NCBI GenBank assembly: GCA_037834085.1
Contig: JBBMKC010042907.1
Span: forward strand, 1-40,150
From: Bipalium vagum
Lineage: Eukaryota
DNA: 40,150 nt
Reading direction: 5' to 3'
Below are positions 13,371 to 36,600 of the stretch, piece after piece; the first letter of the stretch is position 1, and the number at the start of each line of letters is the position of its first letter. Below the pieces are notes generated by a model. The model was not told the origin of the DNA, made no database searches, and saw nothing but the letters and a program-made list of their open reading frames with translations. A program made the position numbers and the translations under genes.

Positions 13371-16300
13371 CATTACAAATCGATTATCAATTTCTAATTA
13401 TTATTACTGAAAATATATTTATAATATTTTGTTAATGATTTTTAAAATTTCTTTGATTCCAGATATATTATCAATTTTATATTTTCTCGTTCTTTATAAA
13501 ATTTTATTTCCAAAATAATTTTCAATATTTCAGTATATATTGATATCGATTTTTAATTTATATTTTTAAAAAACTATTGATTTTTAAATTGTCTATTTTT
13601 CGTAGACTTTTTAATTTATTTGATACTAATTTATTGATTCTACTATATACATTATTCAATTTATATCGATTTTTTCCTGTTTTTCAACGGAACCTATTAT
13701 TTAAAAATTATTTATTGATTATTATACCCTAATAAAGTATTGTTGATTTATCCATTCAGAAATTGGTGGCTTCTGTTTGTCAATATGTGATACACGTTCT
13801 GTTGAGTGAGAACGACTGTGTTCGTGAAAAGGCCGGTTTAGTTTTGCGTCAATTATCGAAAATAACGGGCAGAAATCTGAATGCTCTGTTGCAGCCTCAT
13901 TTGCACATCGTGTCGGACATTTTGCCCCCAAGTCCACTGACGTTCAAAGCGTATCCTTTATCGAAACAGATTGCGATTTTGGTGAGTTGGCTGAAAATTG
14001 TGATTATCGATTTATTATTATTATTATTGATTAATTATTCTTATTATATTAGTTATTTGACTGCTATTGATTAATAATAATTAATATTATTATTATTATT
14101 GATAATATTAATGTCTAGGAAACGAATTACTTGTTCGGTAACCATGTCAATTGTGGAAACTGTGTCCACTATGACATGGACATTGTGAGCCATGAGAAGT
14201 TCATTTGTGAAATTCGCAACATCCTCGAATCGTCGTCGAGTTCAGAGGACGATCTGATCTTACCAGGTTCCGGTTCCGCTTCTTCTAGTGGTTCCAGTCA
14301 GGGTGTTGGCATATCAAATTTGAATCGATCCACACATGCATGTAATATCACCAATCAGCAACAGTGCACCGTTCGACAGGCATGTGCATATACCGATATG
14401 AGTACGGGTGTTGCACTGAAAGTGGCGGCGTGCAAGTTGCTGTCCACCTTGTGGTACTTGGATTCAGGCAAGGACAAGAATTTCCAGGCACTATTTAAAG
14501 GTGGGCTCACCGTTTTTAAAATTTTCTATATTCAATTCTTTTCTTCATGACAACGAATAATCAAGATTATTATTCCTATGATTATTATGTTCATCAACTT
14601 ACTAGGAACTCATCTTACTGAACGAAATAAATGTCCGTTTTCAAATATATATTTGAATAATTAATTATAGTTTCATCGGTTAATAAATTTTAGCCAATTA
14701 GTTAAGTAAAAATAACAAAATAAGTTATTCGATTTAATAATAATACCAATAATAATAATAATAAATATTAATATTAATAATTAAATAAAAATTATTATTT
14801 ATCTGAATTAATTCAAAATATTATTTATCTGAATTAATTCAAAATATTATGTATAATTGATTTTATTATAATTAAAATAAAATTGATATCAGATAATTAA
14901 AATCTGTTATTCATTAGTTTTATTTTAAAAATGTGATCAATAATCGTTAAAGATAATAAAGAATATTAATTTTAAATTTTGATTGATTGTGTTAATTATG
15001 TCTCTAAGAAATTATATGAATTAGTCAATTTTCCTGAAAATAATGTCAAAATTTATTCCATGTTCTTGATTAAAAACGATATTCGAAACATCATTGAATT
15101 CATGAAACGAATCGATTATTTCAGCAATGTGCTCAAAAGACACTGAGGTGCACGAAACAGCCTTTAAAAGTCTCCAGGAATTCCTGAGCCACACAAATGT
15201 CAGTCTGGAATTGCGCAATTCCAACCTGAAACCACTATTGACCACGTTTCGTGAAAATTATTCTATCTCCACCAATCGCCAATTGTATTATTGTGCTCGC
15301 TTGTTCCACGCCAGCTTTAGTGAGCGAATGTGCGAGAGTCTGCTCGTTGTATGATTTCTTTCGTTTCTCCTTTGCAGAGTACATTGATTTTTAACGATTT
15401 ATTGTTTTCCAGACTAAAGTGAAGCCCGTCCTGGACATCCTGTATGAGAAGTTTGACAAGAACGGTTGCATTGACACTGAAAACGATGAGGTTTTCCCAT
15501 AAGTTCATTTCTCTAAATTTTTTTCTCTTATCTACGTGAAAAAACTTTTTTAAAATAATTTTTTACCTTAGAAATTTCAACTACTCATCAAAACCGTAGA
15601 ACTGTTCCACGTTCTCCACGCTGCTTCCAACAAATACGTGCAGTCCTTGTCGGAACTGGTGCTGAAAGTGGAACAGAGAATTTACTGCTACTCGACCAGT
15701 CAATTGAGAAGACCGCTTGTGCTCTATTTGGCCAAATGTCCAGTGGAAACCGTCAAATTGTTTTTGCAGACCCCTAATTTTGTCGAAGATTTCTATGCCA
15801 ATAATTTTTTCGTTGTGAGCAAACCATCTTTTTTACCCATCGCTTTTATTATAATAATTATTGATTTTATTTATTTGTGTAATATTATTACAAGGATTTT
15901 GTCATTGATCATTTTAATATTATTATTACTACTGATTTATTTTTCATTGATTTTACTTCCTTGTATATTATTATTTTTTAATATTTTCTGAAAATCGATA
16001 TTTTCCAATAATATCGATTATCGATCACAATTACGAATTAATCAATGTAATATGATTAATATAGTGAAGAATTTTTAAAAAATTAATTTGAAAAATAGTT
16101 GTCAATCTTTTAAAAATTGACATTGATTTTAATAAAATTTTTATTGATTATTTCAATGATTTGATTTTTTCGTCTGGATAAAGACTTTGCATTTTATTAA
16201 AACGTCGAATTCACGTTTCTTTAAAATTTGAAATCAATTCGGTTTTTAGTATTGATATTTTAAAAAAGAAAATTTTCAAAATCAATAAAACTGTTTGATT

Positions 16301-19300
16301 GTATTTGTAGGAGATTTATTAAAAGTCGATTTATCACATTACTCAAAATAAATTTTATGTTGTCATTATTGATTTTGTTAAAATATATTTACTTAATAAT
16401 TATTAATCATTGATTAATTTAAAGGAACGTAATTCTAATTAGTATTCATTATTTACATTTATTATATTCTACAAGATTTTTTAAAAACTGATCTCCTTTA
16501 TTGATCGAATGATTTTTTTTCCATAGGATTGTTTGGATCTGAAAGAAGCGAAACCAATTCGCGACTATTTACAGAACAATGTCGATCTGATTATCGATTT
16601 ATTGAATAAAAGGCACTCAAGCTCGGACTCCTCTTCCTGTAACATGGATAAATTGAAAGACAACTCCACTGAAATTGCTGCAAATATTCCATGTATATAT
16701 ATTTTTATCGATCGTTTTATGTTTCAAAAATTTATTTTTCTGTTTCTGATTTTAACTTTGTCTTCAAATTTCACGCACTCATCGTTAGATTACAACCTTC
16801 ACCATTTGGCCATCAAAATTGTCGATCGCCTTGCTAAATGGAATTCGGCTTGGTGGCTCAATTCCAAGCGACTGGTCGAAGCCGTCAATCGATACTGGTG
16901 CTCAACGGATTTTCAAAACCGATTGATGAGATTTGACAAAATCCATTACAGCCACTGGAAGGACATCGACACAATTCTCGACCTGCTGATGCGATATATC
17001 GAGTAAGAATGCTTCGCTGTAATTTTCTAAAATATTGATTTTTCAATATTATTATTAATCTAATTATTATTATTTTTTTTATTATTTTTATTGATTTCTA
17101 GTATTTTTTTTCATTTAGTCTTAAACGGCTATTGATTGTTTTATCTAATAACTATTTTTCAAATAAAGTAACTTAATTTGTTTTATTAATTTTTAAAAAT
17201 TGATTTCTTAATTATTATTATTTGAAAGTCGTTTCCTTCATTATGTATCAATAATGAAATTTGGATTGTTATACTATCGATCTAATATTATTATGATCAC
17301 CAACTCTTGTTAACACATGTTAATTATTGATTATTTTTTATTGTCCTTTAAAGTAAAAGACAAAAAATATTATTAATTGAGAAGAAAGGTTTTTAAGGTC
17401 TCAATATCATTAGAGATAATTTTGTTTTTTTCTTGCAAAGCTCTATTAAAATTCTTTGTTCTCTACATGTTCCCACTAACTTTCACCTATTGTCATTATT
17501 GATTCGTTTTTCAGATATTATCCCGACGCGTACGATATTCTGTTTTCCGTTGCCAGAGCATTTAAGATGCGAGCGTTGGGAAGTCTTCATAAATTGAGAC
17601 AATTTCTGACAGATCTTTATCAGACCAGAAATTTCACATGGAAACAGAATATTTTCCGTCATTATACGACCCAAGCGAGTAGTAAAGCCTTTCCTCCTGA
17701 CATTCTGTATGTTATTTTCGCACATATTATCTTGCCCGCCTGGTGTGTGGCTTTGGAAACGATGGCTCATTCATCGGACAAAATTGAACTTTTAGGTGGA
17801 CCTCCAAGACCCAATGAGGATGCAGGTGACAATTTTTTGCTCTGAGAAATAATTCAGTAATTAAGTTAAAATTTAATAATAATAAATCAAGGTTCCACTT
17901 TATATTAAATCAATAAATTATAATAGTTAAAAATCAATAATGACGTTTGATATTATTCAATAAATAAATATTTAAAAAAATAATTATAAATCAATATTAA
18001 TAATAATAACTTAAAAATGAAAAATGTATATTGATTATTTTAATAAATCATATTTAAAACTTGTTACTGGTTATATTAATACTACATTTTTAATTGTTTG
18101 AAATTATTAAAAAATATTATTATTATTAATTTATTATTGTACTTTTGTACAATGTTTAAACTTATTGGTTTTTTTATATTATTTACATATTATATACATT
18201 TGAAATATAAAGCAGATGTTGACAAGTTTCAGTTTCTTTAAAATTTCTAAAAACCTTTATTCCGGATCTAAATTTTTCAAATATATAACAAATCAATTTG
18301 TTACAACTAAGAGATTAAATTGTTTTTCCCATTCAGATGACATTGTCACCCTCTTTCTCAACAAATTAATCGATAATCAAGAATGCTGTGACGGAGGCCT
18401 CCGGGTGGCATATTGTCAGTTTTGTATATTGATTTTGGAATATGCTCCGAACTACATACACGAAATGTCCAACAAAAAGCAAGGCCACAAAGCACGAATT
18501 ATCCTGACGTTCGCGTGGCCCAGTGTCACCAATCAGCAACAATTTACGGATTTATTGGAAAAATATGTCGGCCTTCAGACCATTGCTTATTTGATCAGCA
18601 AATTCAACATCAATCGGAAAATAATCGTGCGAGTCTTCACTTGTCTGGCCAAAGGAAATTGTGTAGAACCCAAAAAAGTGATCAATGCCGCTCTGGGCGT
18701 TTTGGTCCCAGCTTGGTTGCAAAGAAAAGACGATTTGGTATTCTTTTTTTCTGTTCGCTTTGTTTTCGGATTTTATTTGGAACTTTTTCAGAATTTCTTG
18801 GTCTTGCACACGAAAAAGGTTTCCATGGACGACGTAACATCCCAGTCTCAATTACATATTGGGTAGTGTCAATTTTTTCACTTTCTGTTGTTTGTCTCTT
18901 AACAAATTCTTTTTTTCATATTTCAGGAATCTCATCGTTCGACATTCCGATATATATTATCAGGCCCGAATGCACATTTTGCCTCTTATGCAATATTTCA
19001 TCTCCAGACTCAGTACTCAAAACGTAGAATTGATTTTTTCTTTATCACTTTAATCCTTTTTACTTATTACTTTTGCTCTCTAGTTTCAGCCGGATCAGAG
19101 GAGATGTCTCTTGGACATGATTGAGCTTATTATACGTTGGGACATTCGATCGAAAGAAGAAGCCAATATGATAGGAAATACCTCAGTAACATTTAATCTT
19201 TTCTTTTTATCTCTGTTTATGTAACTTTTTTCCGGTTACTTATAAATCATCTTTTCCATAGGTTATAAGTGGCAACCCAAACACCAGCACCATCGGTTCT

Positions 19301-22300
19301 GTGGCAAGCACAGTTGGTATTTGTTCCGGCAACAGCAGCAGTTCCTTACAAGATAAATCTCTCAGTGATCAACAAAAGGAGTCATTGGCCAATCTCATAG
19401 TTCGATTGATGGTCCAGGTCGGTTATAATTGGCTGTCACAAATATCATGATCTTTACTTCAACAATCTCATTTCACTTCACAGATCTTGGACCAGAGTCA
19501 AACCAATTCCGTAATGGTTGACACCGCCTGTCGAAGGGCTTTGTTGCTCCTGGAAACGGCATTTCACCCTTTGGTGTGGGGTCCGATAAATCTCAACATC
19601 GAATCATTGTCTCGTTACTTTAAGCTGGAGCTAGGACCGGTCTTGAATCCGCAAATCCAAACTCAACTCAACAACATGTTTCTCTGTCTCGATCTACTGA
19701 CAACGTTCTTTAAACTCATGGTACGTGCTTTGACTTAAATGGATCTCCATTTTTCATATTAACGATTTTGTCTTTCATTCTCCATTGATCACCCACCTTA
19801 ATTAAGGAACCAAACAACATTCTGTTAAACATCAAATTCTTCACTAAGCCTCTTTGTGACAATCTCAACAATCCCAAAGTTGCACAGAGTCGCTTTATCA
19901 AATATTTCGGTCTCGTCTTGAAAGCACTCCTGTTGAGGTTCCCGGCCGAACCGTCCAATAAACAACGCATTACTCAATATACGGAACTGTTGGACTTGTA
20001 CAATACAGTTTTGAAGGTCATTCAAGAAGCGTTCACGAGCTATGAACAAAAGTCAGTTTTTAGTTTCTTTAATCGATTTTATTTATAATATTATTGTTTT
20101 TATTTATTATTTTTATTTTATTACTATTGTTAATTATTTTTATTATCTTATTATCGATTTTAATTCTTTTTATATTAATATTATTATTGGTTAATTTTTT
20201 ATTTTTATTATAATAATATTCTGCTTTATTTTAATATAATTATTGATTTTTCTATATTTCATTCTATTTTTTTTATTTAGTTATTCTTTATTATTATTAT
20301 TATTGCTTTTTGAAATTGTTTTTCTCTTTTCCAGACAATCTTCACAGAACTCAAATCGAGTTCAATCTGCTCTTTATTTATTAAATATTTCGCAGCAAGT
20401 CAAGCAGAACACTTTCGCTTTTGTCGATCGTTGTCTGTTACATCTCGTCAATATGGCATACAAATTGGTATCAGAAATTATCAAAAACACAAATCAAAGT
20501 GGTATGTTCCAAAATTAATTTTATATATTATTTATTATTTAAATTATTGATTTTTTTATATATTTTCCTTATTCATTATTATTATTATATTAAAATAATG
20601 ATATTTTCCTTTAATAATTATTTTAATTATTAGTAGTTTTGTCGATTATAAAATCATTTTTGACGGTTTTATTTAATAAATTTTTTATGTAGTTATTGAT
20701 CATTAAAATGTGTCTAGTGATTTTTTCCTTTGTCTCAACTTTCCTATTTTTAAATTGACCAGAAATTTTCTCGAATTTGTTCCCTCTATTAACCCATTAT
20801 TATATTAACCCATTAATTATTGATTTCCGGTTTAGAAGAAGTGGAGCAGTTGATTGGGGCCATTGAAATCATCAAAACCCGTTTCAATGTTCTTGGAGCT
20901 GATATGCGTCGAAACAAAGTCATTCGGATATTTATCGATTCTATTTACGTGGTAAAAGATGCCAAATTGTTGCGCGTCATTATGACGGCGTTGAGACACT
21001 GGATGAAATTGCCGAAACAGGAAGAACACTTTGCACCGGGAATGCGGGAGAAATCGGAGCTTTTCGTGAGACTGTGGGCCAAATATCTGAGCTGGTCAGA
21101 CAATCCGGAAATTCAAAAAGAAATTCTTAGCGTTTTGTTGCTTGTCTTCGAGAATGAGCAGTTGCAAATTGACGACACCAACAACACGTTCCAGACTGCG
21201 TTTTGCACTGGCATGGTTAGTCCGTGGACAGAGGTCAGAGAAAAATTTCTGGAATTCTATCTCGAGCCGATCCGGTCCATTAATCTTCTGGAACGGTTCT
21301 TGTTCTTGATATCAGCCAACGAATGGGATTCCAGATATTTCAAACTCGTCAATTGGATCCCGACATTTCTCGACGTTCTCCTCATCGATATCAAACTGGA
21401 TGATGATTTCAATGTAAATTTTAAATCGTTTTCTCACCATACTGGTAACGACAGTGCCATGGAGAACGATAGTGGGACTTGCAAATTGGAGGAATTGGAA
21501 CCGATGGATATCGATTTATTTAGTGGTGGTGGTGGTAGTGGCAGTGCTGATTGCACGACTAGTGGAAATGTTGGCGCTCAGATCAATGTTGCCAGTTTTG
21601 CCAATTTATCCTTGAAATCGTTGACCGATCACAATTCTCACCATTTGATGGAAATGAAATCGTCAGGCACCGTGGTGGATCGATTTTACAAAAATTCCAT
21701 TTACACATATTTTTCCTGTTCGAATAACAAACCTAATTTTTCCAATTCTTCAGTTGATATAGAATCACTCGTCTCACAACACAATCGAACGTGGAACAGT
21801 ATCAAGAAAGTGGGTCAATTACAGATTTTAAAAAGAAATTATTGATTATTTAAAATAATAATTATAATTTATCGATTTCATAAGATTCAATTCATTTTTC
21901 ACTTTAATTTGTTAATTCATTATTGATAAATTAAAATCGTAATATTTATTATTAATTTAATTGACTTCCCCTCACTCTAATTTATTGATTTATTATTGAA
22001 ATAATAAAATAATTATCTTTGATTTTTATTGATTTATGTTTGAAAATTTTTAATCGTTATTTTTTGATTTTTAAAATAATATATTTTTAGATTTTATTGA
22101 TCAATATATTTGAGTTTTAATTTTATAAATCTTACAATTTAAATATTAATTTCTATTATATTTGGCCGATTTAATTGCATTTATTAATTATTTGAATATT
22201 AAATTTTTTTTCATTTCAGGTGCAATTGACCGATATAATGTCGAGTATCTTATTAATGTGTTACAATTCACAAAAGTTGTCGAATGTTATTTTTCAAAAC

Positions 22301-25300
22301 CTATTTCCTCAACTTTGGCATCTTTTCCTCACAAAATATCCCGACATGTGGTCGATAATCAGACAAGAAATGATCCATTTTCTCTCCAATCCCAGTCACA
22401 ATCAACACATCGGCCAATGGACGCCCAACCCGATGACATGCTTTTTGGAAGCCGTGTCAAAAATCCCAAACTTGTTCAGCTGGTTTCAGGACTCGACTTT
22501 TGTGGTAAAAATGAATTATCTATCGCTTTTTAAGTGAAATATATAATTCATATTTCCCAGTTTTTGGCCTCATCTCATAATCAATGGTTTCTCGGTACAA
22601 TGATAATTGAAGACTGTCTTTATCGACCTAATCGATCGAAGAGTGTTACTTACAAACAGAATCAGCATCAAGATCACGAAAACAAGGACAAAAGTGATGA
22701 TGATGACGACACCAACAACAACGACGAAGACGAGGACGATAACAACATAGGTTACAATCCTAAAGACATCAGCGATCATCATCAGGATCACCAACAACAA
22801 CAGCATTCGGGAAACAATACCATTCTCTCTGCTTCCTCATCCTCCGCTACGAAGCACGAAGGAATCGAGTCGAATGGAATTATTTATAGACCGGATTTTT
22901 TTCTCAGCCTCAATTGTCTGTATGAGCTACTGGAGGAAGAGGACTACCAATTCGGACTATGGGCCGAGAAGTGTTCGTTTCTCACCCAGGAAATGCAGCA
23001 GAGTATGGTTCTGGCTCAACAGGGCCAGTACGACAAAGCTTTGAAAGTCAGCGTCGAAGTAAGAGTGCCGCTACCTTTTGTTCTTTTATTTTCCCTCAAT
23101 GACTCTCTTTATCTCTTATATTCCTACTTTCCAGTTCGTGGGTCAATCACTCAGCTCCAGTGTGGAATACCGAGATATTGTCACACGTCAGAAATTTTAC
23201 GACTTCAATTATCGGTTGGCAGTTTGTTTTAATACTGGTTTATGATTAGCAATTGGCTTTTAGTTTAACGCTAACTATCCCTTATCTCTTTGCTTTATCA
23301 TTTTTCAGATATCTCAAAAAATTGGGACAATGGGACATGCTTGATAAATTTCTTAACGGAGAGAACGTCAATTATTTGATCAAAGCCGAATCGTTGTGGC
23401 GCAAGGGTCAATGGAAAGAGATCATTCAGAATCACAAATTGGTATTTACTTCTTATTACTTTGAATCGATTTTAGTTTGAATGATTTATTTTATATCGAT
23501 TGATTTCTGATTTTATTATTTATTATTATTATTGATTTTATATTTTCTTATTAGTATCAATAAGTTTTTAAAAATTTCACATTTGATTCATTAATGTTTA
23601 TTTTTTGAGGATCTTTTTAATAGACCTTATTGATTATGATGACTATATTGATCCTCTATTAAAAAATAATATAATCAATATTTTATATTTCTTAATTAAT
23701 CTATTCAAAATGATTTTAATAAATGAATCCTCACTACACTTTTGAATTCGATTGATTGGATGGGTGTAGAATCAAAACAGCGTGCCCGAAATCGATAAAT
23801 GGCGCTCTCAACTCATCTATTGTTATGCTTTGATCATGAACAAGATGCCTTTGTTACCGAACAATGAAGATCTGGCCAACACTCCGCAGCTTGACAACGA
23901 GTTCAATAAAGTGACGGCATTGGTGTTGCAACAATGGAAATCTTTGCCCAACAATTGTATCATTACACCACGACACGTGTCCATGTTGCAGGCCTGTAAT
24001 CTGGCCGTCGAGGGCTGGGACGGAATGCAGCTGTTCAGTGGAAACCATCCAAACAATGTCATCAGTGAAGTGAAATCAATGGTCAAATCGTGGAAGTATG
24101 ATCGAGTTTTTCTTTGTGCAAATCTTCATCTCTCTCTTCACTCTCACTCGGATCCAGAAACAGATTTCCTCATCACAGCGACAGCTTCTCTTTCTGTAGT
24201 GATATCGTTTTGTGGAGAAAGGCTGTCTTCGACAAATTGATTCACATGACGACCAGTGCCGCCAATGATTCGTCTCGAGCGTACCGAAATGAAATTTATT
24301 TGCTTTTATTAGAGTTGGTGCGCAATGGTCGAAAACAACATCTTTCTTCATGCACTAAAAATTATGCCGACAAGTATGTTTTAAATTAATCATTAGTGCT
24401 ATGGTAATCGTTTATTAGTTTTATTTTATTTTAATGTATTTTATCAATATTTTTTTAATATTTTGTTTTTAATAATAGATTTTATTAATTATTTTATATA
24501 ATAAGATTTTATTTTATTCAGGGTATTGTTTATTTTTTATCTCTTATTATTTATTTATAATTTTGTTTTGTATATATTGTATTATTTTTTTAAAATATAA
24601 GGGAGACATCGATCAACTCGAAAAAGCACCCCTATACCGGGGGATTCCTATAATATAACAATGACCAAAGAAAATTCCCTTCTAATGAGGTGACCCTTAT
24701 AAAACAATAAATATGTTTATTTATTTTATATATTATTTACTTTAATTTGTATATTTCGTAATTTATTATTATTTAATACAAATGAAATATTTATCTTATC
24801 TGACTGGTTGATATCATGTCTGAATTGAATAGATTAAAGCAACAATTACCAGAGATGGTGTCGAACTCGTTCTCGCTCTACAAGCAGGAGTGCAAAGTGA
24901 AAATGTTCGAAGAAGGCTGGCGGCACAGTTACGTTGAGGTACAATAGCTTTCCCTTTCCTCGATTGTGTGTGTTAATCTTTGATTTGTTTGTCACAGTCG
25001 CTGGAAATGCTGGAGAATGTCGATGCTCAACGGTTCAAAGAGAAGCGTGACCTGGCCAAGTTCTACTGTTACAAAGCCATGTTGTTCTCGTACTTTAACA
25101 AGTTTGTATTTTTCTTTTTCCATTCATCGTTCTCTATGTTTTCCGATTTCGATTTTTTATATTTTTGGTTCAGGGGTGACGAAGCCACTCGGCATTTCGG
25201 ATACGCGCTGCAGATTGATCCATACAATAACAAGATTTGGAGTATTTACGCCGACTTTCTCGAGAATGTGTTCTCTAACTATCCAGGAGAGTGAGTTGAA

Positions 25301-28300
25301 AATTCATTTTTAGTAACATGATTTATCGACTTTTCTGCCTCTCAAACAGACGTCGTCAAAGGGCCAGTCATACGACGGGAATATTTGCCATCACAGCTCT
25401 GGTTGAAGCGGCGTCGGCCTTGAAACCTCCTGGACTCGGTGGTTCCGGTGGAGGAGCAGGGGGACCGGGAGGGGTTGGCGGAACTGGTGGTGTCAGTGGA
25501 GGAGGTGCTGGAGGAGTTGGAGGTAACATCGGTGGTAGTGGGGGTAGTGCTGGCAGCAGCAGCGGTGGTGTTGGCACTGCCGGAGGCGTTGGTAGTAACA
25601 GTAGTGGCACAGGTAGTACCGGCAGCAGCAGTGCCTCAAGCAGTCATTTGCGTGACAATCGTGTCTGTTCCAATCTGGCTAAATGTCTCTGGTTGATTAC
25701 TCTCGATGATGACCAGTTACTTATGTCGCGTCACCTGGAGGATATTAGTAACAAATTGCCCGCTTCGACATTGTTGCCATGGGCACGCAGTCTTGTCACT
25801 TGTCTATTGCGACCTGAAGCCAAAAATATCGTACCGATGATTATTAGATTGTGCAATGAATTCCCTGAGGCCGTCTACCAACCGTTCCGATGTTTGCGAG
25901 ATAAAATCGATAGAGAACTATTCTTCAATGAAAATTCTTCGAAAGTCTTGTTAGGACAATCATCTTCGTCATCAGCAGCAACGGCGGCCGCGGCTTCATT
26001 ATATGATAATATTCTGAATCAGGTAAGTCAGAAAGAAATAGAAATTAAGAGAGATAGAGATTTTGGAAAGAGAGAGAAACAAAAAAGAAATTTTGAAAGA
26101 GTGAAAAGAAAGCTTAAGGGGAGATGAGTAAAGGAAAGAGAAGTTTTGATGGAGAAAGATAATGTAAAGAAAGAGAAAAAGTATAAAATAAGAAACTAGA
26201 GGGACAAGGAAAGAAGAAAATAGTGAGTGAAGAGAGAAAAAACAAGAAAAAGATGGAAAAACAAAGAAATTTGAAAATAGGAGTAAAATAGAAAGAGATG
26301 GAAGATAAAATAGTAGAGATAATAAAAAAGGCGGAGAAAGGGATATGATAAGATAATAAAATTAAGAACATAATAGAAATAGATTAAAAGGAGAGAAATA
26401 GAGCAGAGAGATAAAAGAAAGTGGTTATTGAAATAGGAAAAGAGAGATGGGGAAAGAACGATGGAATGATTATGAAAGAGATAATATAATTATTATTACA
26501 TGTTTTAATAACCAATTGTTTTCGTTTCAGATGAAAAAGCACAACGGGTCGAAGCTGTATTTGGTCGACGAGTTCTGTCAGCAATTGGAATGGCTCTGTC
26601 CTAGTTGGAGCGAGCAACTTCTGGCGCAGCTCGTTTCTATCACCCGCCGATTGGAAGATCACGCTTTTGATTTACTCATTGCATCGTCCCACGGCTCTTC
26701 CACGCTAACTAATGAAAAGCTACCTGACAATTTCATCGTGGAGCTGCACCATTTGGGCATGCTGCTTGACTTTTCTACAGACTCCAGCATGGATATAGAC
26801 AATGAGGATCCGTGCTCGACAATCAATCGATTGTGGTCCGTCTGGTTATCAATTACAAGTAACGAGGTCGTCAGTGCCCGTTACCACGCCTATTTGAACA
26901 GTCGATATTGTCAAGACATTCGTGTTCGATTTAGCAACGATTTTGGCAATTCAATGTTATTGTATTTGATGGTCTGTTGCTTATAATGACTTTTTGTGTT
27001 TTTAATTGTTTCAAAATGTTTTATTGATATTTTCTTTTCAGCCGACTTTGAACAAATTGAAAAAAGTTTGGATTCCTCTGATGAAAAGAATTGTCAACAT
27101 GACCCCGAAAAGTCACTTTTTGGACGAAAAAACTCGACTGTTGACCGAAATCGCTCAATCAAGTTGTGAGCTCAGTCTCCCTGGAGATTTGAGCATAATT
27201 AAACGAAAAGAACACCAGCTTCATGTAACCGATTTATTTTAATTATTTATCAGTTTAATTTTTTATTTCAATTATTTTATTGTTGATCAATTTATTTAAT
27301 ACTATTGATTTATTTAATTATTATCTACATTATATTTCATTTCCCACATCTTCGAAACAGATCGCGTCTGTGAGCCCATTGGTGGAACGAGTGTGGAGCA
27401 ACCATCAGTTTTGTCGTCGAATCAGAATCCGTGCCAGCAACGGACACAATTTTGATTATTATGTGCAATCATCGATCACCGATTTGCATTCGTTGGTTGT
27501 CGATTCGAAAAACGATGGATGTTCGATTTATCGATTTTGGATGCAGGAGAGACTGTTCCAGATTTTCCGAGTCATCAATGAAAGTTTGGCCAAAGAACGA
27601 GAAGCCTGTCGACGAGGGCTGACACTCCACGCAACAAGGTGATCATTATTCATTTGTGTATATGTTTAATTTTTTTGTGTTTAATGATATCTATTATTAT
27701 TTTGTCATTAATTATTTATGTTTATTGTGCTCAGATTAATGGAAATTAATTGTCGCGGTGCACACCTTCGAGAGGTTGGTTGTGGCATGAATCCGATATT
27801 GCAAAAGGATTTTGATCTGGACAACGTTCGAATTGTGTCGCTGGAGAACGTTTGGCATTGGTATTGTAATGATAAAATTGATTCGCTTCAGTTTTCACTA
27901 AGAAACGATTCAATTAATAATATTGGTAATAGCAACAATAACAATAGTGACATCGTCGGTAGTGCGACAGCAACAATTACAATTCCCAACAAAATCGATA
28001 AACAACTGTCGACTACCATAGAAGTTTTATCCGATCCGGAAAAATCAATAATCACTTTTATGGAAGAAGAAAATCTCCGTTCTGTTTCATCTATAAACTC
28101 TAAGGCCATCAATAAAGTAAATTATCGATTTTTTAAAATTGATTATTCTAACATTAATTGATTTATTTATGGTCAATTTATTGTTACAATGTAAAAAATT
28201 AATATTTTGTAAAACATGAAATTATTTTATTTTTATTTCAATAAAATAATAAATATATTTTTTTAATTTATTATTTTTCTTTATGAAAAGTAATTTATTG

Positions 28301-29176
28301 AAATAAATCATTTTTTGTCTCACAGAAACTGTCCAATTGCTCAAATCGATTGCAACAGCACACGAAAAATGAGGCCCTCATCAAATTTTCTCGAGCCTTC
28401 TCTGTTGGTCCCGAGGACTATTGGATGTTGCGCAAGCAGCTTACCAATGATTTCGCGACGTTCAACATGATTCAATATCTGCTCCAAATCGCTCCTATGG
28501 ATCCACATCAATACATTATCGATTTGAGGAAAGCCACTTTGCAAGTTCTGTCTCCTGAACTCCATTTGTCCGATGAGGGTTTGTTCATATGGCTTATCAA
28601 TTATTGATATCAATTAATCCTATTGATTTCACAGCATGTCTGGAACCTCATCGATCCAACATCCCGTTCCGACTGAGTCCGAATATTGCCCAATTCCTCC
28701 AACCGAGCGGCCAGCTCGACAGTCTTTGGAACAGTTCCAGCCAACCGTACACAGCCAGCATGATTGCCACCGGTCACGTGATCTATTGGTGCAAAAATAA
28801 CTTGATGGCGCTCATCCGAGCACTACTGCGTGACTATTTTGTCTTGTGGCACAAGTTCACTTCGACCACGGCTACTGCCGCAATCGCCAATAGCAACAAA
28901 GACCTTTCATCATCGCAACAGCAGCATCCAACGGTGGTGGAACTGGAAAATTCCGTGCTCGAGAAATGGCTGTCGTCTGCCACTGAGCAGATTTACAACA
29001 GAATTTCTGGTTTGAGAATTTCTTTTAGTTTTTATTGATTTTTTTTCATTTCCTCTGTGGTGTGCGCAGGAGTTGGTCGAGTTGATGATGACACGATCAT
29101 TCGTGACAAAATCAAAGGCGCTCTGGACCCCGTCAATCAGGCCTGCACGAAACTCAGCTATCAGCACTGGATTTGA
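6532..29176 (+). CDS. TRRAP: Transformation/transcription domain-associated protein (TRRAP/Tra1), PIKK pseudokinase scaffold of SAGA and NuA4/TIP60; 52 exons, ~4258 aa
   Basis: Diagnostic motifs: QFLQENPLQQLRK, ENEEN.MIC, IIPKSCYSLKVMQEIP, DFLAAQVKTLSFLAY, RPLAYSTLADLIHYV, LLRYLFRSIGGG, ELCVIVPVRLSTLLPHLSLLMEPLV, GLRTLELCVDN, then FAT, a pseudokinase (IPFRLSPNI, no DRH/DFG) and a FATC-like end. Hand exon model: 6532-6604,6647-6696,6751-6966,7021-7299,7352-7518,7577-7673,7735-7879,7978-8056,9046-9351,9418-9544,9617-10111,10220-10465,10522-10848,10966-11292,11692-12019,12094-12272,12629-12846,12937-13207,13760-13981,14119-14500,15125-15348,15413-15490,15572-15814,16527-16692,16789-17002,17515-17825,18337-18737,18792-18862,18927-19023,19084-19185,19262-19417,19484-19720,19807-20051,20335-20501,20836-21809,22220-22504,22561-23058,23135-23214,23309-23441,23770-24095,24158-24373,24833-24938,24998-25101,25174-25290,25350-26022,26531-26971,27042-27224,27361-27638,27735-28116,28326-28578,28635-29009,29070-29176. 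All introns are GT-AG and the total of 12777 nt stays in frame. Individual boundaries may be off where alternative sites exist. Confidence 0.96.
12290..12595 (+). repeat. CT-rich (polypyrimidine) low-complexity tract filling a TRRAP intron
   Basis: About 300 bp dominated by ttctctct/tctttc words, unlike the AT-rich neighbouring introns. Confidence 0.8.
13300..13368. repeat. (TTA)n microsatellite in a TRRAP intron
   Basis: Perfect TTA array; it causes the poly-Tyr tail of ORF 12965..13369. Confidence 0.97.
14795..14846. repeat. Perfect 26-bp tandem duplication, each unit containing the palindrome TGAATTAATTCA
   Basis: ttatttatctgaattaattcaaaata occurs at 14795-14820 and again at 14821-14846. 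Confidence 0.9.
24596..24701. mobile_element. Putative ~100-bp MITE-like insertion in TRRAP intron 24374-24832
   Basis: GC-richer island bounded by tataagggagacatc...gaggtgacccttata, a 12/15 inverted match with TA at both ends. Confidence 0.4.
26030..26480 (+). repeat. GA-rich (polypurine) low-complexity tract filling a TRRAP intron
   Basis: About 450 bp almost devoid of C, made of gaaagag/agaaata words. Confidence 0.85.
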
Positions 29177-30910: not shown

Positions 30911-32832
30911 GGGAAAAAAATTTTTTTCTCACACTTGTAATTTTTGTGATAAAAGATGAATTAATATATTTTTTTTGAAAATTGTTAATATTTATTGATT
31001 CCGCTTGCTAATTAGACACTTACTATATGTCTAAATTTTGAAGACTTGCTTAAATAATATATCCAAATTTTAATTTCTTAAATTTTATAAATTATTATTG
31101 AAAAATTTTTTTCTGACAGTTAGTACATTTTTACTTATAATAGTTTAAAGTAAAGATTTTAGGTATTTATTCAAAAGAATTAAGAAATATTGTCATGTAC
31201 AAACGTTCATTGATTGAATCGTACAGTTTTTTATTATTAAATAAATAAATACTCAAGCCAGGACTTCAGCATTATATAATTTTTTTAATTTTCTGTCCCT
31301 TTTACTTTTTTTATTTTGTTATTTCATACTCTAAGTAGGGCGGTGAGATAGATTGTTCTTTATCGAGGACCTCTGAGTCTAAGTGAGAGAGAATTTTTCA
31401 TAATAATAATAACTATAATTAATAACTTATTTTTTGATCAATCAGGGACTATATCACTCTTTTGTAAATTTATACTTTATTTTAATAAAAATAAAAGTTT
31501 TAAAAATCAAATCGTTTTCTCAGTCACTTTAAATTATAATAACGAACACGTAAATAAGCAACCTTCAAACGTTAAGACCTAAACACAATAAGCTCCACTC
31601 TTTAACTTTCTATCCATCTTTTAGGATCTTAACAATAATATAAAGGATTATATAATAAGCTTTAAATCAATAATAAATTTAGAATGTACTAACTTAGTTA
31701 CACTAAGTACAACAAATTGTGTATTTAAATATATAAAAGAAGATAAATTACGTTTAAAAATAAATAAGCATATAAACTAGAAGTCGTTTTTGTTTTTCGA
31801 TTTTGATTTTTCTGCTTGGTCGGTAACTCTACTGGCTGCTTGTCGTAGTATTTTGTGTTATTTTTTTTTCTATTTTTAAATGTTGCTTTCCGTATTTATA
31901 TATATTGTTTGGTTCCGAATATAATGTAGGTGTTCGTCGTTCCAACTTGATGGCTTGCGTAGGATATACAATCTTTTTTGATTTTGATAATAATCACTGC
32001 TTCTTGTTAGCACTCGCTAAATTTAAGTTTTGCTTGCTATTATATATTTTGTCTGACTTCTTATGATTTTTCTTTCCTTTTATATTATTAACTTTGCTTG
32101 TTTTTCTTATAATAGTAAATCTCTTGTTTCTTCCAATGGCAAAGAATGGAAGTTTAACACTTAAACAAAGTTTGTTGTCATAGGATCACAAACAAATATT
32201 TAAAAAATTGCTGTCAACAGAAACAAATATTGTTGTCATCATTGTTAACAGAAAGATGATTGTTTCTTTGGATTTGGTTGTGCTTGGGGGGATCACTCTC
32301 CACTGATGTTGTTGACTGAATTGACTGTTTTTGCTTGCATAAAATAAAAATAAAATATAAAAAATAAAGATTTGAAGAATGCATTTACAACTTCTAACTT
32401 TATATTAGTTTTTTCATAAATCTTTCAATTTTAATTTTATTCTGAATATGGAACACTTAAATATTTATTTTTTCATGTTTCATTCCACGTGGATTGGAAT
32501 TTAAAATAAAGTGGCATTGAAAATAAAAAATTTCCTTAATTTAAGATATGAAAATTATTTAAATTTAAAGTAGTTTAAATTTGGCAGATTACAGTTTTTG
32601 AATTACAATTCTTTTACTAATTAAAATAAACTGGTTTAAAAAAAATAAAAATCAATGATAATGTTATTTAGGATTGGGATAAAAGTAAAAAAATAATTCA
32701 ATTTAATAATAAAATTAAGAAATATAAAATTCATTTATCATTAAATTCATTTAATAAATGAAATAAAATAAATCTCGTGTTTAAATTTATATCCAAAATG
32801 TCTGAGTAAAATCATTTTTTAAAATATTTAGT

Positions 32833-33680
32833 ATGGCCGCAAGTGATTTTCGAAGAAATAATTTTTATTGTCGTTTTTAAAATTGTAGATATGCCACGAA
32901 AATCAAAGGAAATCGTAACGAAAGAAGAGCCTCCTCAATCAAATCGACGCAGAAGTGCTAGGTTAGCAGCAGTTGAGCCGAAAACAAAAACAAAAGAAGA
33001 ATCTCCAACGAAAAAGTCAAAGAGACAGGCAGCAAAAGTAATTTTTGATATTTACATTACAATAATCCAATAAAATTTTCAATTTAGCGTGCTTCAAACG
33101 AAGTAAAGAAGACAATGGTGGAAGAGGAGAACGTCAATTCCAATATTGAGTCAACACCATCGTTAGACAAAGTGGAACAAGATGGCGACAAAAATCCCGT
33201 CGAAGCCCAAGACGAGACGGAATCCAAAAAGGTGAAATTGGACGACGACAACACTTTGATAAGTACTTTTTTTATTTCACGAACCAACAATCGTTTATAT
33301 TCAAATTTAAGAAAAAGATGAGGAAAGCACCGAAATGGTGGTTGAAACACCTAACGACAAGGAACACCAGTCTGAAGAACCGGTTATTGTGGAAACAAAA
33401 CAACCCGAACAGCAGCATCAACAAGAAAAAAGTGAGAACAATGAACCGGAGAATGTGAAGCAGGACCAACAAACAGGTTCCGTCATGAAGACCTCATGAT
33501 TTTTGATTGAATACATTCCTTTGACGTTTAGATCTAAAGACGGCAGCTGAGTTAGCGCCCAGTAAAACTGCGGAACAGAATCACGTCAATGACGTTCAAT
33601 CAATCGAAGACAAGGACGACCCAAAATCAAGTGTCGCGTTGCCCGTCACCGCCGCTGCCGCTGCTCCTATCAGCAATTAG
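32833..33680 (+). CDS. Small intrinsically disordered nuclear protein with an HMGN-like nucleosome-binding motif and a long acidic tail (211 aa from ATG 32891; 215 aa if micro-exon ATGGCCGCAA 32833-32842 is used)
   Basis: Exons (32833-32842), 32889/32891-33037, 33088-33262, 33312-33476, 33532-33680, separated by 46-55 nt GT-AG introns, with the frame intact. Protein: MPRKSKEIVTKEEPPQSNRRRSARLAAVEPKTKTKEESPTKKSKRQAAKRASNEVKK...E/D/Q-rich...PVTAAAAAPISN*. The gene structure is well supported; the HMGN-like function is inference. Confidence 0.82.
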
Positions 33681-36600
33681 ATCGATAGTCTCAATTGATT
33701 GTGTGTTTGCGTGTCTGTCTGGTGTTAATGTGTTTGATATATATATTGTGTCATTTATCAATTGTATTGTCATTGTGAATAATCATATATTTAAAAAATA
33801 ATGGTCTTGTGAGGGTTTTTCTCTTTTCCAATCTCGTTATATCTATTTTTCCCTATTTTGCCTCATTCACAAAGGTCTGATGTGTACAGAAAAACGTTGA
33901 AAGAACGGTTTTTAATTGTTTCCATGCTTCGTATTTAGAAATTTTCAAAAAACGATTTTGTTTGATTAATTTTTCATGTTTAAATCAATTAATGAAAGAT
34001 TTTTAATTATTATTGTTTTATGTAATTAATATTTTAACAAATCGATTTTATTAATCTATATTATAATTAGTTTATGTTTGGGATGTGTTTTTTATTAAAT
34101 GTTAGTTAAAGTTATGCCAGGAATGACTGATATTTAATGAGATTTCGATCTGACTTGACCGTATTTGAAAAATGAACAAGGATAATTACATTCCGCGTCT
34201 TAAGCTGGTTCAGTTCTCTTTGTTGATTCTCAATAAATTTTATTAGGTTTTAAGGTAATTAGAATTTTATTTTGTAATGCCATACCTCAGATTGTGAATG
34301 GTATTAGGTCAGTCGGTTAGGAATGGAAATTTTAAAAAAGAAATGTTAATTTTAGTGAAAGTCATCGTTGAAAAAAAGATTTTAATTGTTTCATCGAAAT
34401 TCTAAAATATTTTCTTTTCATTAAATGTTTAAAATGATAGTGAAAAATAAGAAAATTTTAATTATTGATATTTTGTAAAAAAATATTTTATAAATTGATT
34501 TTAATTTTTTTAGATCTTATTTGTTAAATTTGTGTCAAGCATCAATTTACCGTTTTTATCATGTTTGAAAAATTAAAGTTCGTTCCTTTCAGCTCATGAC
34601 GTGCTTTCTCGAAATTGTTCCAGCTATTTCTGATTCTTATACATTTTTTTGGATTTTTTAAATTGTAGAAATTGTCCTGTTTCATTATTTCTTATCAATC
34701 TAAATTTCATGGCTAAAGTGAAAGAGCAGTCGTTTGGGATGTCAATTTTTCTACTAAACCGCTTTTTTCTGATCAAACAATATTTTAATGTCTGTCTTGC
34801 ACAATTTATACAAAATTCATTTCTAATGAAAACAAAAAAAATTCTAATATTGATATATTGTAATTAATGTATTGATTTATTAATTTATAAGAGTTAAGTT
34901 TCAAGGGCTTTATTTTTCTGTAAATACTAAGTTCCACAACATATCCTTAACTTTATTTAAGACAGAGAAGACAAAATTGATCTTCCAATTTCGTATCGTT
35001 AAAATTGATAATTTATATTTTGAGTTTAAGGTTAAAAGTGATCTTCATTTTTTGTTTAACATTATTTCTTTGAAATTTCTTTTGTATTGATTGTAACAAT
35101 TCGCAAGTCGTGAATGGGCCTGATTTGTCATATCGTATCCTAGTTTTAATAAAACTTTAGCTTCGACTTGAATGACAAGATGAGTTATCGAGATAGGACA
35201 AACTACAGTGGACATTACACTTTTCAATTTAGGCTCCTCTTAGCTTCACCATTTTTTGGGGCAACATTAAATTCTAGGGAGTCTAACTATCTAAATAAGT
35301 TTTCTGTGCAATTTAAAATTCCTTTGTTCCGGCTAACATTCACCTTCACCCGAATTTTTAAAGTCTTCAACTATCAAGTGAGTCAAGGTAACATAAAACA
35401 TTTAACTGAGCCTTTCATTGTGGAATTGTCGATTAAGAATGCAGATATTTTAAGAGAACAACAAGGTCAAATAAATTTTACGACAAATATGTTGATAACA
35501 TGATCGTTATGTTATTGATCCATCTTGAAGTTCTCTTAAACATTTGAGGTGCACCTTCAGGTGAGCTTTGTAGAATTATGAAATGTGATTTCTGGACGAT
35601 TTCCACGACACGGTTCGGAAACCTTAAAAGCTGGTTAAGCAGATCACGAGTGTTAATGCCGGTGTCGGTGATTAAATAACATTTTTTAAATAAGACAATT
35701 TTTACAAAATTCCTCAGTAAAAACAGCTCTGATAAGTACGCATACGAAATGATATAATTATATTTTTCATATCCAACTGCTTGGGTCGTTATCTGTTGAT
35801 CAGGAATCCACGCTAACAATAACCAACAACGGTTTTCTGAATAGAGCCATATTAAAAGGTTTCGTATGAATTTGTTTTTACTCAAAAAACGTCAAATAGT
35901 ATTTATCCTGGCCTTAACTTTTACAATAACATTTTCAGTGTTAATGAAAATGTCATACTGGTTATATTTCTGTTTGCAGCATATCTGTACAAACCAATTC
36001 TGTTGAATAGTACAACATAAGACTGAATATAAGCAAGCATTGTTCTTTAATTGCGGACTGTCCTATCAAAATTCCATTGAATTTAGTGTAAAAATATTCT
36101 TATGTTTTAATTGTGTATTATGCTTCAGTATAATGGACAAAAGAGGCATTAGTGTCGAAGAATAAAATGTACTAATTGTTGTCATATTTTTTCAATCTAA
36201 CATTTTTTTGCTAATAAAATCAATACATGACAGAAAAGTTAATATTTTCAAAACATTCTAAGCTCCTTATTAAAATCAGAACCCCTCGATATTACGTACA
36301 CCTCGTTATGATGTGTGTTGAATTGGATAAGTTTTAACAATTTTAAAACATTCACTTTAATATGATAATAGTTTCAATACAGATAAAAATGAACATAAAT
36401 AATCAATATATCACAGAAAATTTAAATAATCGTAAAATTAAATATTTTCAACTTTGAAATAAAATATTCTGAACATAATAAAATAATCGATATTTTTGGG
36501 ATATTTGTGTGATTATTTTGTTGAGTCAATTTTTCAGATAATTATTTTAAAAGTAAAATTAATTTAATATAAATGAATAAAGGCACATCCCTGGAATATC

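What the first reader, a model, noticed from the sequence alone, without database searches (positions are those of the whole stretch)
32833..33680. HMGN-like nucleosome-binding protein in an apparently non-vertebrate animal
Seen: a cleanly spliced gene encoding MPRK..KEEP..RRRSARLAA.EPK..KK..AAK, followed by ~150 aa of E/D/Q-rich disordered tail with a second basic patch (SKKVK). Known: HMGN proteins begin MPKRK, carry KEEPKRRSARLSA (the octapeptide that docks on the H2A-H2B acidic patch), then a Lys/Pro linker and an acidic tail (very long in HMGN5), and are described as vertebrate-restricted. Inference: the tiny introns, high AT and very divergent TRRAP argue against a vertebrate. This may therefore be an unrecognised invertebrate HMGN homologue or a convergent analogue. 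The second Ser of the motif (a mitotic phosphosite in HMGN) is Ala here, and a CDK-type SPTKK site follows, hinting at different cell-cycle control. Caveat: RRSxRL motifs arise convergently in many chromatin proteins.
Basis: partly seen in the sequence, partly recalled or inferred. Interest (0 to 1): 0.8.

Follow-up and report, generated by a model that had tools for sequence, protein, structure and literature searches.

The report
Planarian protein with HMGN-type nucleosome-binding motif
A small, disordered flatworm protein carries, near its start, an almost exact copy of the eight-residue peptide that vertebrate HMGN proteins use to grip nucleosomes. It is therefore probably a flatworm counterpart of HMGN, although nothing beyond that short motif shows common descent.

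Summary
**Observation: confirmed.** A four-exon gene on the plus strand (coding sequence 32891-33680, GT-AG introns of 49-55 nt) encodes about 211 residues.
- It has no aromatic or Cys residues.
- The first 49 residues are basic (net +10) and the rest is acidic (net -22).
- Residues 20-27 read RRSARLAA, against the published HMGN core RRSARLSA.

**Conservation.**
- The genome holds a second, old copy. Synonymous sites between the two are saturated, yet every motif residue is kept, through synonymous changes at all four Arg codons and the Leu codon.
- One public protein from a related species (P0001) has the same motif and the same first two exon junctions.

**Not a member of the HMGN family.**
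- Pfam HMG14_17 misses all three proteins and the whole genome, yet scores 46 bits on a 31-residue HMGN2 fragment used as a positive control.
- Outside the 8-mer, similarity to HMGN2 is no better than in shuffled sequences.

**Mechanism.** A controlled complex prediction puts residues 19-25 on the H2A-H2B acidic patch (score 0.76, best control 0.01).

**Context.** HMGN-like motifs outside vertebrates are already published (tardigrade Dsup, yeast Dot5). This looks like the closest non-vertebrate match and the only one with an HMGN-like overall layout.

**Limits.** I found no RNA data and there is no binding experiment. The host is taken as a planarian from earlier scan notes, which I did not test.

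The parts
32773..32842 (+). Conserved non-coding block upstream of the start codon. It includes a TATA-like TTTATATC at about 32786-32793. Presumed core promoter and 5' leader.
   Evidence: About 90% identical between copy A and copy B over about 70 nt, although synonymous sites of the two genes are saturated. The promoter role is inferred.
32891..33037 (+). Exon 1. Its 49 codons form the basic N-terminal module (net +10, pI 10.8).
   Evidence: It is 82% identical to copy B and 74% identical to P0001.
32948..32971 (+). HMGN-like core motif RRSARLAA (residues 20-27), preceded by a third Arg (R19).
   Evidence: - 7 of 8 residues match the published HMGN core RRSARLSA.
- Invariant in A, B and P0001.
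- Arg and Leu codons differ synonymously between A and B.
- Predicted to contact H2A E61/E64 and H2B E103.
33002..33013 (+). S-P-T-K, a CDK-consensus site (residues 38-41) inside the Lys-rich stretch that follows the motif.
   Evidence: S-P-x-K is kept in all three sequences. Copy B and P0001 add a T-P-K-R site. Phosphorylation is inferred only.
33038..33087 (+). Intron 1 (50 nt, GT..AG, phase 0).
   Evidence: The same junction is present in the P0001 protein model and in copy B.
33088..33262 (+). Exon 2. It begins with a second strongly conserved block (RASNEVKKTM..EENVNSN.ES.PS) and contains the KK.K patch at 33223-33237.
   Evidence: pN is 0.17 against pS 0.91 between A and B.
33263..33311 (+). 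Intron 2 (49 nt, GT..AG, phase 1).
   Evidence: The junction position matches P0001 and copy B.
33312..33476 (+). Exon 3, part of the acidic, Glu/Gln-rich tail.
   Evidence: DEES.E....T.N.K is conserved; the rest has diverged (pN 0.47).
33477..33531 (+). Intron 3 (55 nt, GT..AG, phase 1). This is the least certain junction.
   Evidence: Reading through the donor would end the protein at a stop at 33497-33499.
33532..33680 (+). Exon 4, the end of the tail with the stop codon TAG at 33678-33680.
   Evidence: The pentapeptide QNHVN and a following I.DK-like stretch recur at the C-terminal end of copy B, which supports this frame (sequences, read by eye).
33741..33783 (+). Conserved block in the 3' untranslated region.
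   Evidence: Nearly identical between copies A and B. Its function is unknown.

Best explanation
The gene encodes a small, intrinsically disordered chromatin protein that so far is seen only in this flatworm lineage.

**Proposed mechanism**
- The N-terminal RRRSARLAA segment docks as an arginine anchor on the H2A-H2B acidic patch of the nucleosome.
- The Lys-rich stretch after it probably touches nucleosomal DNA.
- The long acidic tail probably modulates neighbouring histone tails or competes with other chromatin binders.
- Ser22 inside the motif (an RRxS site) and the conserved S-P-x-K site are plausible phospho-switches that release the protein.

This is the way vertebrate HMGN works. The protein is not demonstrably a member of the HMGN family: it may share only the short motif, by convergence or by very old descent.

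**Shown here:** the gene, the motif, its conservation and the protein's composition. **Inferred:** binding, phospho-regulation and cellular role.
For: - **Match to the functional core.** The motif matches the published core RRSARLSA in 7 of 8 positions and has all three arginines shown to be essential in Dsup and Dot5. It starts at residue 20, against 22 in HMGN2.
- **Strong purifying selection on the motif.** It is invariant in three sequences while synonymous sites are saturated.
- **HMGN-type layout.** The first 49-50 aa have net +9 to +10. The rest has net -13 to -22. There are no aromatic or Cys residues and GRAVY is -1.4.
- **No fold.** The AlphaFold model of P0001 has pTM 0.20.
- **Arg-rich then Lys-rich order.** This matches the NMR description of the HMGN nucleosome-binding domain.
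- **Complex test.** Exon 1 was modelled with this genome's own H2A and H2B.
  - The score was 0.76 against a best control of 0.01. In the tool's calibration, 51 of 78 solved complexes and 2 of 108 mismatched pairs reached the mark.
  - The runs share at least 52% of their contacts, and the partner's pLDDT is at least 51.
  - Contacts run from residues 19-25 and 28 to H2A A60, E61, E64, L65 and to H2B V42, Q45-P48, E103, L104, K106, H107.
- **Weak lead.** The two nearest ESM Atlas clusters to P0001 are HMG14_17, at a score of only 0.80.
- **True paralogues.** TRRAP is single-copy in the assembly, so the two copies are not a mix of two genomes.
Against: - There is no RNA evidence and no binding data.
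- The complex test is uncalibrated for peptides and disordered chains. It may score high because similar acidic-patch complexes have been solved.
- The HMGN2 cryo-EM paper reports that AI structure predictors handle HMGN-nucleosome complexes poorly.
- The predicted contacts do not list H2A D90 or E92, which belong to the canonical anchor triad.
- An RRRS sequence is also a generic basophilic-kinase site, and basic stretches also serve as nuclear import signals.
- The family is known from only two species, so its breadth is unknown.
Confidence: 0.55

Rival explanations
1. It is a true HMGN family member. On this reading the nucleosome-binding domain plus acidic tail descends from a gene already present in the bilaterian ancestor, and has diverged beyond profile detection outside the core motif.
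For: - 7 of 8 core positions match, at almost the same distance from the N terminus as in HMGN2.
- It has an MP+basic start, a similar charge layout and a similar size range.
- The nearest ESM Atlas clusters are HMG14_17 (weak).
- Alegrio-Louro et al. argue that the motif predates the protostome-deuterostome split.
- A medaka Hmgn2 variant is reported as undetectable by standard homology searches (abstract).
Against: - PF01101 finds none of the three proteins and nothing in the genome at E up to 10, but scores 46 bits on a 31-aa HMGN2 fragment.
- The flanks of the motif are no more similar to HMGN2 than shuffles.
- KEEP is not conserved in copy B or P0001, which read KKEEAP.
- The exon-1 profile found no vertebrate HMGN at E up to 0.001 among 1.84 billion proteins. 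A 50-position profile has little power at that database size.
- A conserved second block (RASNEV..EENVNSN) does not appear in the 31-residue HMGN2 fragment I had. The rest of HMGN could not be compared.
- Yeast Dot5, described from my own knowledge as a peroxiredoxin-type enzyme, also carries the motif. A fold unrelated to HMGN would mean the motif can arise independently.
Confidence: 0.12
2. It is a nuclear or nucleolar acidic disordered protein, for example a histone-chaperone-like or phosphoprotein scaffold. On this reading the RRRSARL segment acts as a kinase site or as part of an import signal, not as an acidic-patch anchor.
For: - RRxS is a generic basophilic-kinase consensus, and several basic clusters (PRKSK, KKSKRQAAK, KK.K) look like import signals.
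- The strongly conserved second block, residues about 44-75, points to a partner other than the nucleosome.
- The tail is long and acidic, as in histone-binding chaperones.
Against: - Conservation extends over the whole 13-residue RRRSARLAAVEPK. That includes L, A, A, V, E and P, which a kinase site or an import signal would not need.
- The complex model singles out exactly residues 19-25 for the acidic patch, with near-zero controls.
Confidence: 0.2
3. It is a Dsup-like genome protector. On this reading the protein coats chromatin through the motif and shields DNA from hydroxyl radicals, rather than regulating chromatin.
For: [quoted passage not shown] It is also highly charged and disordered.
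Against: - In Dsup the motif sits near the C-terminal end (residues 363-370 of 445), and the Dsup region from 360 to 445 is essential for binding. Here the motif is N-terminal and the remainder is net acidic, which should repel DNA.
- No sequence similarity to Dsup was found in any search.
Confidence: 0.08

Closest known systems
Vertebrate HMGN1-5 (Pfam PF01101, HMG14_17)
   Same: - Core motif: RRSARLAA here against RRSARLSA.
- The motif starts about 20 residues from the N terminus.
- An Arg-rich segment is followed by a Lys-rich segment, then an acidic disordered tail.
- No fold, and small size.
- A Ser inside the motif at the position whose phosphorylation is modelled to break HMGN2 binding.
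   Different: - No Pfam match, with a working positive control.
- No similarity beyond composition in the flanks, and no Pro/Lys-rich KPxPPKPEPKPKK segment.
- The second Ser of the motif is Ala.
- A conserved block after residue 44 does not appear in the HMGN2 fragment compared.
- The whole basic module lies in one exon.
- The host is a flatworm.
Tardigrade Dsup (Chavez 2019, PMC6773438; Alegrio-Louro 2025, PMC12487698)
   Same: [quoted passage not shown] In Dsup the motif binds the acidic patch through an arginine anchor and is needed for nucleosome binding.
   Different: - The Dsup motif is RRSSRLTS (5 of 8 matches to the HMGN core) and lies near the C-terminal end of a 445-aa protein.
- The planarian motif matches 7 of 8, is N-terminal, and is followed by an acidic tail.
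- No sequence relationship to Dsup was detected.
Yeast Dot5 N-terminal HMGN-like motif (NAR 2026, PMC13347269; read here as bioRxiv 10.64898/2026.01.14.699602)
   Same: An N-terminal RRSAR-type motif (RRSARIAT, residues 6-13) mediates acidic-patch binding. Its arginines are required.
   Different: In Dot5 the motif is an appendage on a folded enzyme (enzyme identity from my own knowledge) that also has a C-terminal DNA-contacting region. The planarian protein is wholly disordered and has no enzyme domain.
Other arginine-anchor binders of the acidic patch (for example the LANA N-terminal peptide)
   Same: A short basic peptide inserts an Arg into the H2A E61/D90/E92 pocket (cited).
   Different: Their sequence motifs are unrelated, and the proteins have other functions.

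Membership tests
HMGN (Pfam PF01101 HMG14_17) | Significant match to the family profile (curated cut-off 23.5 bits). | tested here: not met
   - No hit at E up to 10 for exon 1 of copy A, exon 1 of copy B, or full-length P0001.
- No hit in a six-frame search of the whole assembly. That search also rang in none of its 14 control genomes, so it has no working positive control and adds little.
- Positive control: a 31-aa HMGN2 fragment scores 46.1 bits, E 9.7e-12.
HMGN (Pfam PF01101 HMG14_17) | Core octapeptide RRSARLSA in the nucleosome-binding domain. | tested here: met
   RRSARLAA at residues 20-27, a 7 of 8 match with all Arg residues present. It is invariant in three sequences.
HMGN (Pfam PF01101 HMG14_17) | Similarity across the roughly 30-residue nucleosome-binding domain beyond the octapeptide. 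| tested here: not met
   In shuffle tests against the HMGN2 fragment, the N-flank gives p 0.07-0.67 and the C-flank p 0.44-0.78. Only one HMGN fragment was available as a comparator.
HMGN (Pfam PF01101 HMG14_17) | Disordered protein with a basic N-terminal part and an acidic C-terminal tail. | tested here: met
   Net +10 followed by -22, no aromatic or Cys residues. pTM is 0.20 for P0001.
HMGN (Pfam PF01101 HMG14_17) | Specific binding to nucleosome core particles through the acidic patch, with two molecules per nucleosome. | not testable with these tools
   There is only a model: score 0.76 against a best control of 0.01, with contacts on H2A E61/E64 and H2B E103. This is support, not a demonstration.
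HMGN (Pfam PF01101 HMG14_17) | Shared descent shown by orthologues, intron positions or synteny. | not tested
   No vertebrate HMGN gene sequences could be fetched with these tools. The profile search over 1.84 billion proteins linked no HMGN, but it has little power for a 50-position profile.
Proteins with an HMGN-like nucleosome-binding motif (HMGN, Dsup, Dot5) | An R-R-S-x-R-[LI] motif with three arginines, which are essential for binding in Dsup and Dot5. | tested here: met
   R20, R21 and R24 are present and invariant.
Proteins with an HMGN-like nucleosome-binding motif (HMGN, Dsup, Dot5) | Motif-dependent preference for nucleosomes over free DNA. | not testable with these tools
   This needs gel-shift or equivalent assays.

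The most novel reading that the evidence does not exclude
Planarians carry a genuine, very divergent HMGN-type gene family. If so, the nucleosome-binding domain plus acidic tail architecture arose before vertebrates, and the description of HMGN as vertebrate-specific is wrong. An RNAi-tractable, stem-cell-rich invertebrate would then become available for HMGN biology.
Probability: 0.12. Interest if true: 0.8.

Novelty: new variant of a known kind. Interest (0 to 1): 0.6.

Why it matters
HMGN proteins are abundant regulators of active chromatin and are described as confined to vertebrates.

[quoted passage not shown] They called for systematic searches across lineages.

- This planarian family matches the HMGN core more closely than the other two published non-vertebrate motifs (7 of 8 positions, against 5 of 8 for both Dsup and Dot5).
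- It is also the only one of them whose whole layout resembles HMGN.
- If binding is confirmed, the result is either a striking case of convergent evolution of an entire protein design or the first sign of a pre-vertebrate HMGN.
- Planarians allow RNAi and stem-cell chromatin studies, so the function is testable.

Tried and rejected
- **Word-index protein search** with the open frame around exon 1, scored on residues 28-76: no candidates.
- **Same search with P0001:** it found only itself.
- **PDB sequence searches** with exon 1 and with the two-copy profile found nothing relevant. They carry no weight, because even the HMGN2 fragment itself finds nothing there.
- **P0002**, the second hit of the big search, is a repetitive unrelated protein and was dismissed.
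- **Exact look-up of P0001:** no encoding contig. Its cluster has one member, with only a UniParc identifier, so its species stays unknown.
- **RNA evidence:** the only run found is colinear with the genomic DNA, introns included, and shows no splice joints.
- **Host identification from TRRAP failed.** ESM Atlas taxa were uninformative. The word search gave two unnamed proteins at 65-66% identity, one from a Logan run whose organism I cannot look up.
- **Third RRSARLAA locus (C70247):** a 270-bp GC-rich contig with no supporting open reading frame in that frame. I rejected it as a probable contaminant or chance match.
- **Joined four-exon protein:** it was not sent to any search or folding tool. 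Searches were done exon by exon by reference, with P0001 standing in for the full length. The joined model was assembled only inside scripts for translation, alignment, substitution counts and composition.

Full report
**1. What is in the sequence**

Reading 32400-34200 and translating the pieces gives a four-exon gene on the plus strand.

| Part | Coordinates | Note |
|---|---|---|
| Exon 1 | 32891-33037 | 49 codons |
| Intron 1 | 33038-33087 | 50 nt |
| Exon 2 | 33088-33262 | |
| Intron 2 | 33263-33311 | 49 nt |
| Exon 3 | 33312-33476 | |
| Intron 3 | 33477-33531 | 55 nt |
| Exon 4 | 33532-33680 | TAG stop |

- All three introns are GT..AG and the phases fit, giving about 211 residues.
- The SKKVK patch is at residues 95-99.

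**2. It is a real, selected gene**

- The assembly (G000, 440 Mb in 272,664 contigs) holds a second copy on contig C238224.
  - Its exon 1 is 82% identical and it has the same intron positions.
- A profile of the two exon-1 peptides was run against 1.84 billion representative proteins. It returned one true relative, P0001.
  - P0001 is 145 aa and is known only by a UniParc identifier.
  - It is 80% identical to copy B and 74% to copy A in exon 1, so it comes from a related species.
  - Its sequence runs across the same exon 1/2 and exon 2/3 junctions.
- Between copies A and B, synonymous differences are saturated (pS 0.76-0.91). Non-synonymous differences are 0.15 in exon 1 and 0.17 in exon 2.
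- In and next to the motif, all four Arg codons and the Leu codon differ, yet the peptide RRRSARLAAVEPK is identical in all three sequences.
- TRRAP, the neighbouring gene, is single-copy. The two copies are therefore paralogues and not a mixture of genomes.
- A loose DNA pattern for RRSARL[SA]A matched 10 places in the whole assembly.
  - Only copies A and B and a 270-bp GC-rich contig, probably a contaminant, translate to the motif.
- I found no RNA support. The single run holding the stretch is colinear with the genomic DNA and is probably its source.

**3. Character of the protein**

- The first 49-50 residues are basic: net +9 to +10, pI 10.6-10.8.
- The rest is acidic: net -13 to -22, pI 4.3-4.4.
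- There are no aromatic or Cys residues, and GRAVY is about -1.4.
- AlphaFold on P0001 gives pTM 0.20 and mean pLDDT 64, with only isolated helices, so there is no fold.
- Conserved features beyond the motif:
  - an S-P-x-K site, with an added T-P-K-R in copy B and P0001;
  - a KK.K patch;
  - a strongly conserved block at about residues 44-75 (KRQAAKRASNEV.KTM..EENVNSN.ES.PS);
  - a QNHVN element near the C-terminal end of copies A and B.

**4. Is it an HMGN?**

[quoted passage not shown] The planarian motif matches 7 of 8 positions and starts at residue 20, against residue 22 in HMGN2. The family test nevertheless fails.

- Pfam HMG14_17 gives no hit at E up to 10 for exon 1 of A, exon 1 of B, or P0001.
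- It gives no hit in the six-frame assembly either. That genome search rang in none of its 14 control genomes, so it adds little.
- The same model scores 46.1 bits on a 31-residue HMGN2 peptide taken from the abstract of PMC3298710.
- In shuffle tests against that peptide, the whole exon 1 scores above chance (p 0.002-0.014). With the 8-mer removed, the flanks do not (p 0.07-0.78).
- KEEP is not kept in copy B or P0001.
- The ESM Atlas puts two HMG14_17 clusters nearest to P0001, but at a score of 0.80. The tool itself calls that only a lead.
- The PDB sequence searches were uninformative, because even the HMGN2 peptide finds nothing there.

Conclusion: the motif and the architecture are shared, but family membership is not shown.

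**5. Mechanism**

- Cryo-EM shows HMGN2 R26 and Dsup R367 acting as arginine anchors on H2A E61, D90 and E92.
- I took H2A and H2B from a histone cluster of this genome. Their acidic-patch residues are intact.
- I ran the controlled complex test with exon 1 as the partner.
  - The score was 0.76 (three runs: 0.74-0.77) against a best control of 0.01.
  - In the tool's calibration, 51 of 78 solved complexes and 2 of 108 mismatched pairs reached the mark.
  - The runs share at least 52% of their contacts, and the partner's pLDDT is at least 51.
  - Confident contacts involve partner residues 19-25 and 28.
  - These touch H2A A60, E61, E64, L65 and H2B V42, Q45-P48, E103, L104, K106, H107.
  - R24, the counterpart of HMGN2 R26, lies against H2A E61 and H2B E103-H107.
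- Caveats:
  - The test is not calibrated for disordered peptides.
  - Similar complexes have been solved, so a pass may only reflect likeness.
  - D90 and E92 are not among the named contacts.
  - The HMGN2 cryo-EM authors found that AI predictors handle HMGN poorly.
- I read the result as support for "works like HMGN", not as proof.

**6. What is already known**

- HMGN-like motifs outside vertebrates are published:
  - Dsup, RRSSRLTS;
  - yeast Dot5, RRSARIAT.
- Both match the HMGN core in 5 of 8 positions. Both sit in proteins whose layout is unlike HMGN.
- I found no paper linking HMGN to planarians or other flatworms. In the three papers that hold both "HMGN" and "planarian", neither word is in the title or abstract; I did not read them.
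- Earlier notes of this scan call the genome a planarian.
  - I did not verify this independently.
  - The 30% GC content, the 49-55-nt introns and the absence of HMG14_17 fit a non-vertebrate.

**7. Verdict**

The protein is best described as a lineage-restricted, HMGN-like nucleosome-binding protein, that is, a functional analogue that shares the core motif.
- True homology is unproven and, on present evidence, unlikely (about 0.12).
- It is a new variant of a known kind.
- Interest is moderate to high, because the field has asked for exactly such proteins and planarians are experimentally tractable.

**Procedural note.** The joined four-exon protein was not submitted to any search or folding tool. 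It was assembled only inside scripts for translation, alignment and counting.

Noticed in passing
window 32773-32842 and L002 about 1700-1770 (minus strand): About 70 nt upstream of the start codon are about 90% identical between the two paralogues, although their synonymous sites are saturated. The block contains a TATA-like TTTATATC and the sequence TTTAGTATGGC.GCAA. It may be a shared promoter or leader element.
   Followed up: partly
window 33741-33783 and L002 about 865-905 (minus strand): A block in the 3' untranslated region (ATATATTGT..CATTTAT..TTGTATTGTCATTGTGAATAAT) is nearly identical between the paralogues. It may be a regulatory or polyadenylation-region element.
   Followed up: no
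window 33019-33165 (residues about 44-75 of the protein): A second block is conserved as strongly as the HMGN-like motif in all three sequences. It does not appear in the HMGN2 fragment I compared, and it may bind a different partner.
   Followed up: no
L002 1228-1272 and 1060-1107 (copy B, minus strand): In copy B the second and third introns are 45 and 48 nt long, in frame and free of stop codons. Retaining them would still give an open reading frame. P0001 ends exactly at the position of the third junction, so it may be a truncated or intron-retaining model.
   Followed up: partly
window about 9000-29000, plus strand: This is a large multi-exon TRRAP/Tra1 gene, with Tra1_ring hits at 18216-18863 and 20820-21842. 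It is single-copy in the assembly, and the best public matches to one 341-aa exon are only 65-66% identical.
   Followed up: partly
L035 (G000 contig C70247, 270 bp); also L008 (contig C227334): These are GC-rich short contigs in an assembly that is otherwise about 30% GC. C70247 looks bacterial. C227334 carries an H2A-H2B pair with GC-rich codons. Together they suggest some foreign DNA in the assembly.
   Followed up: no
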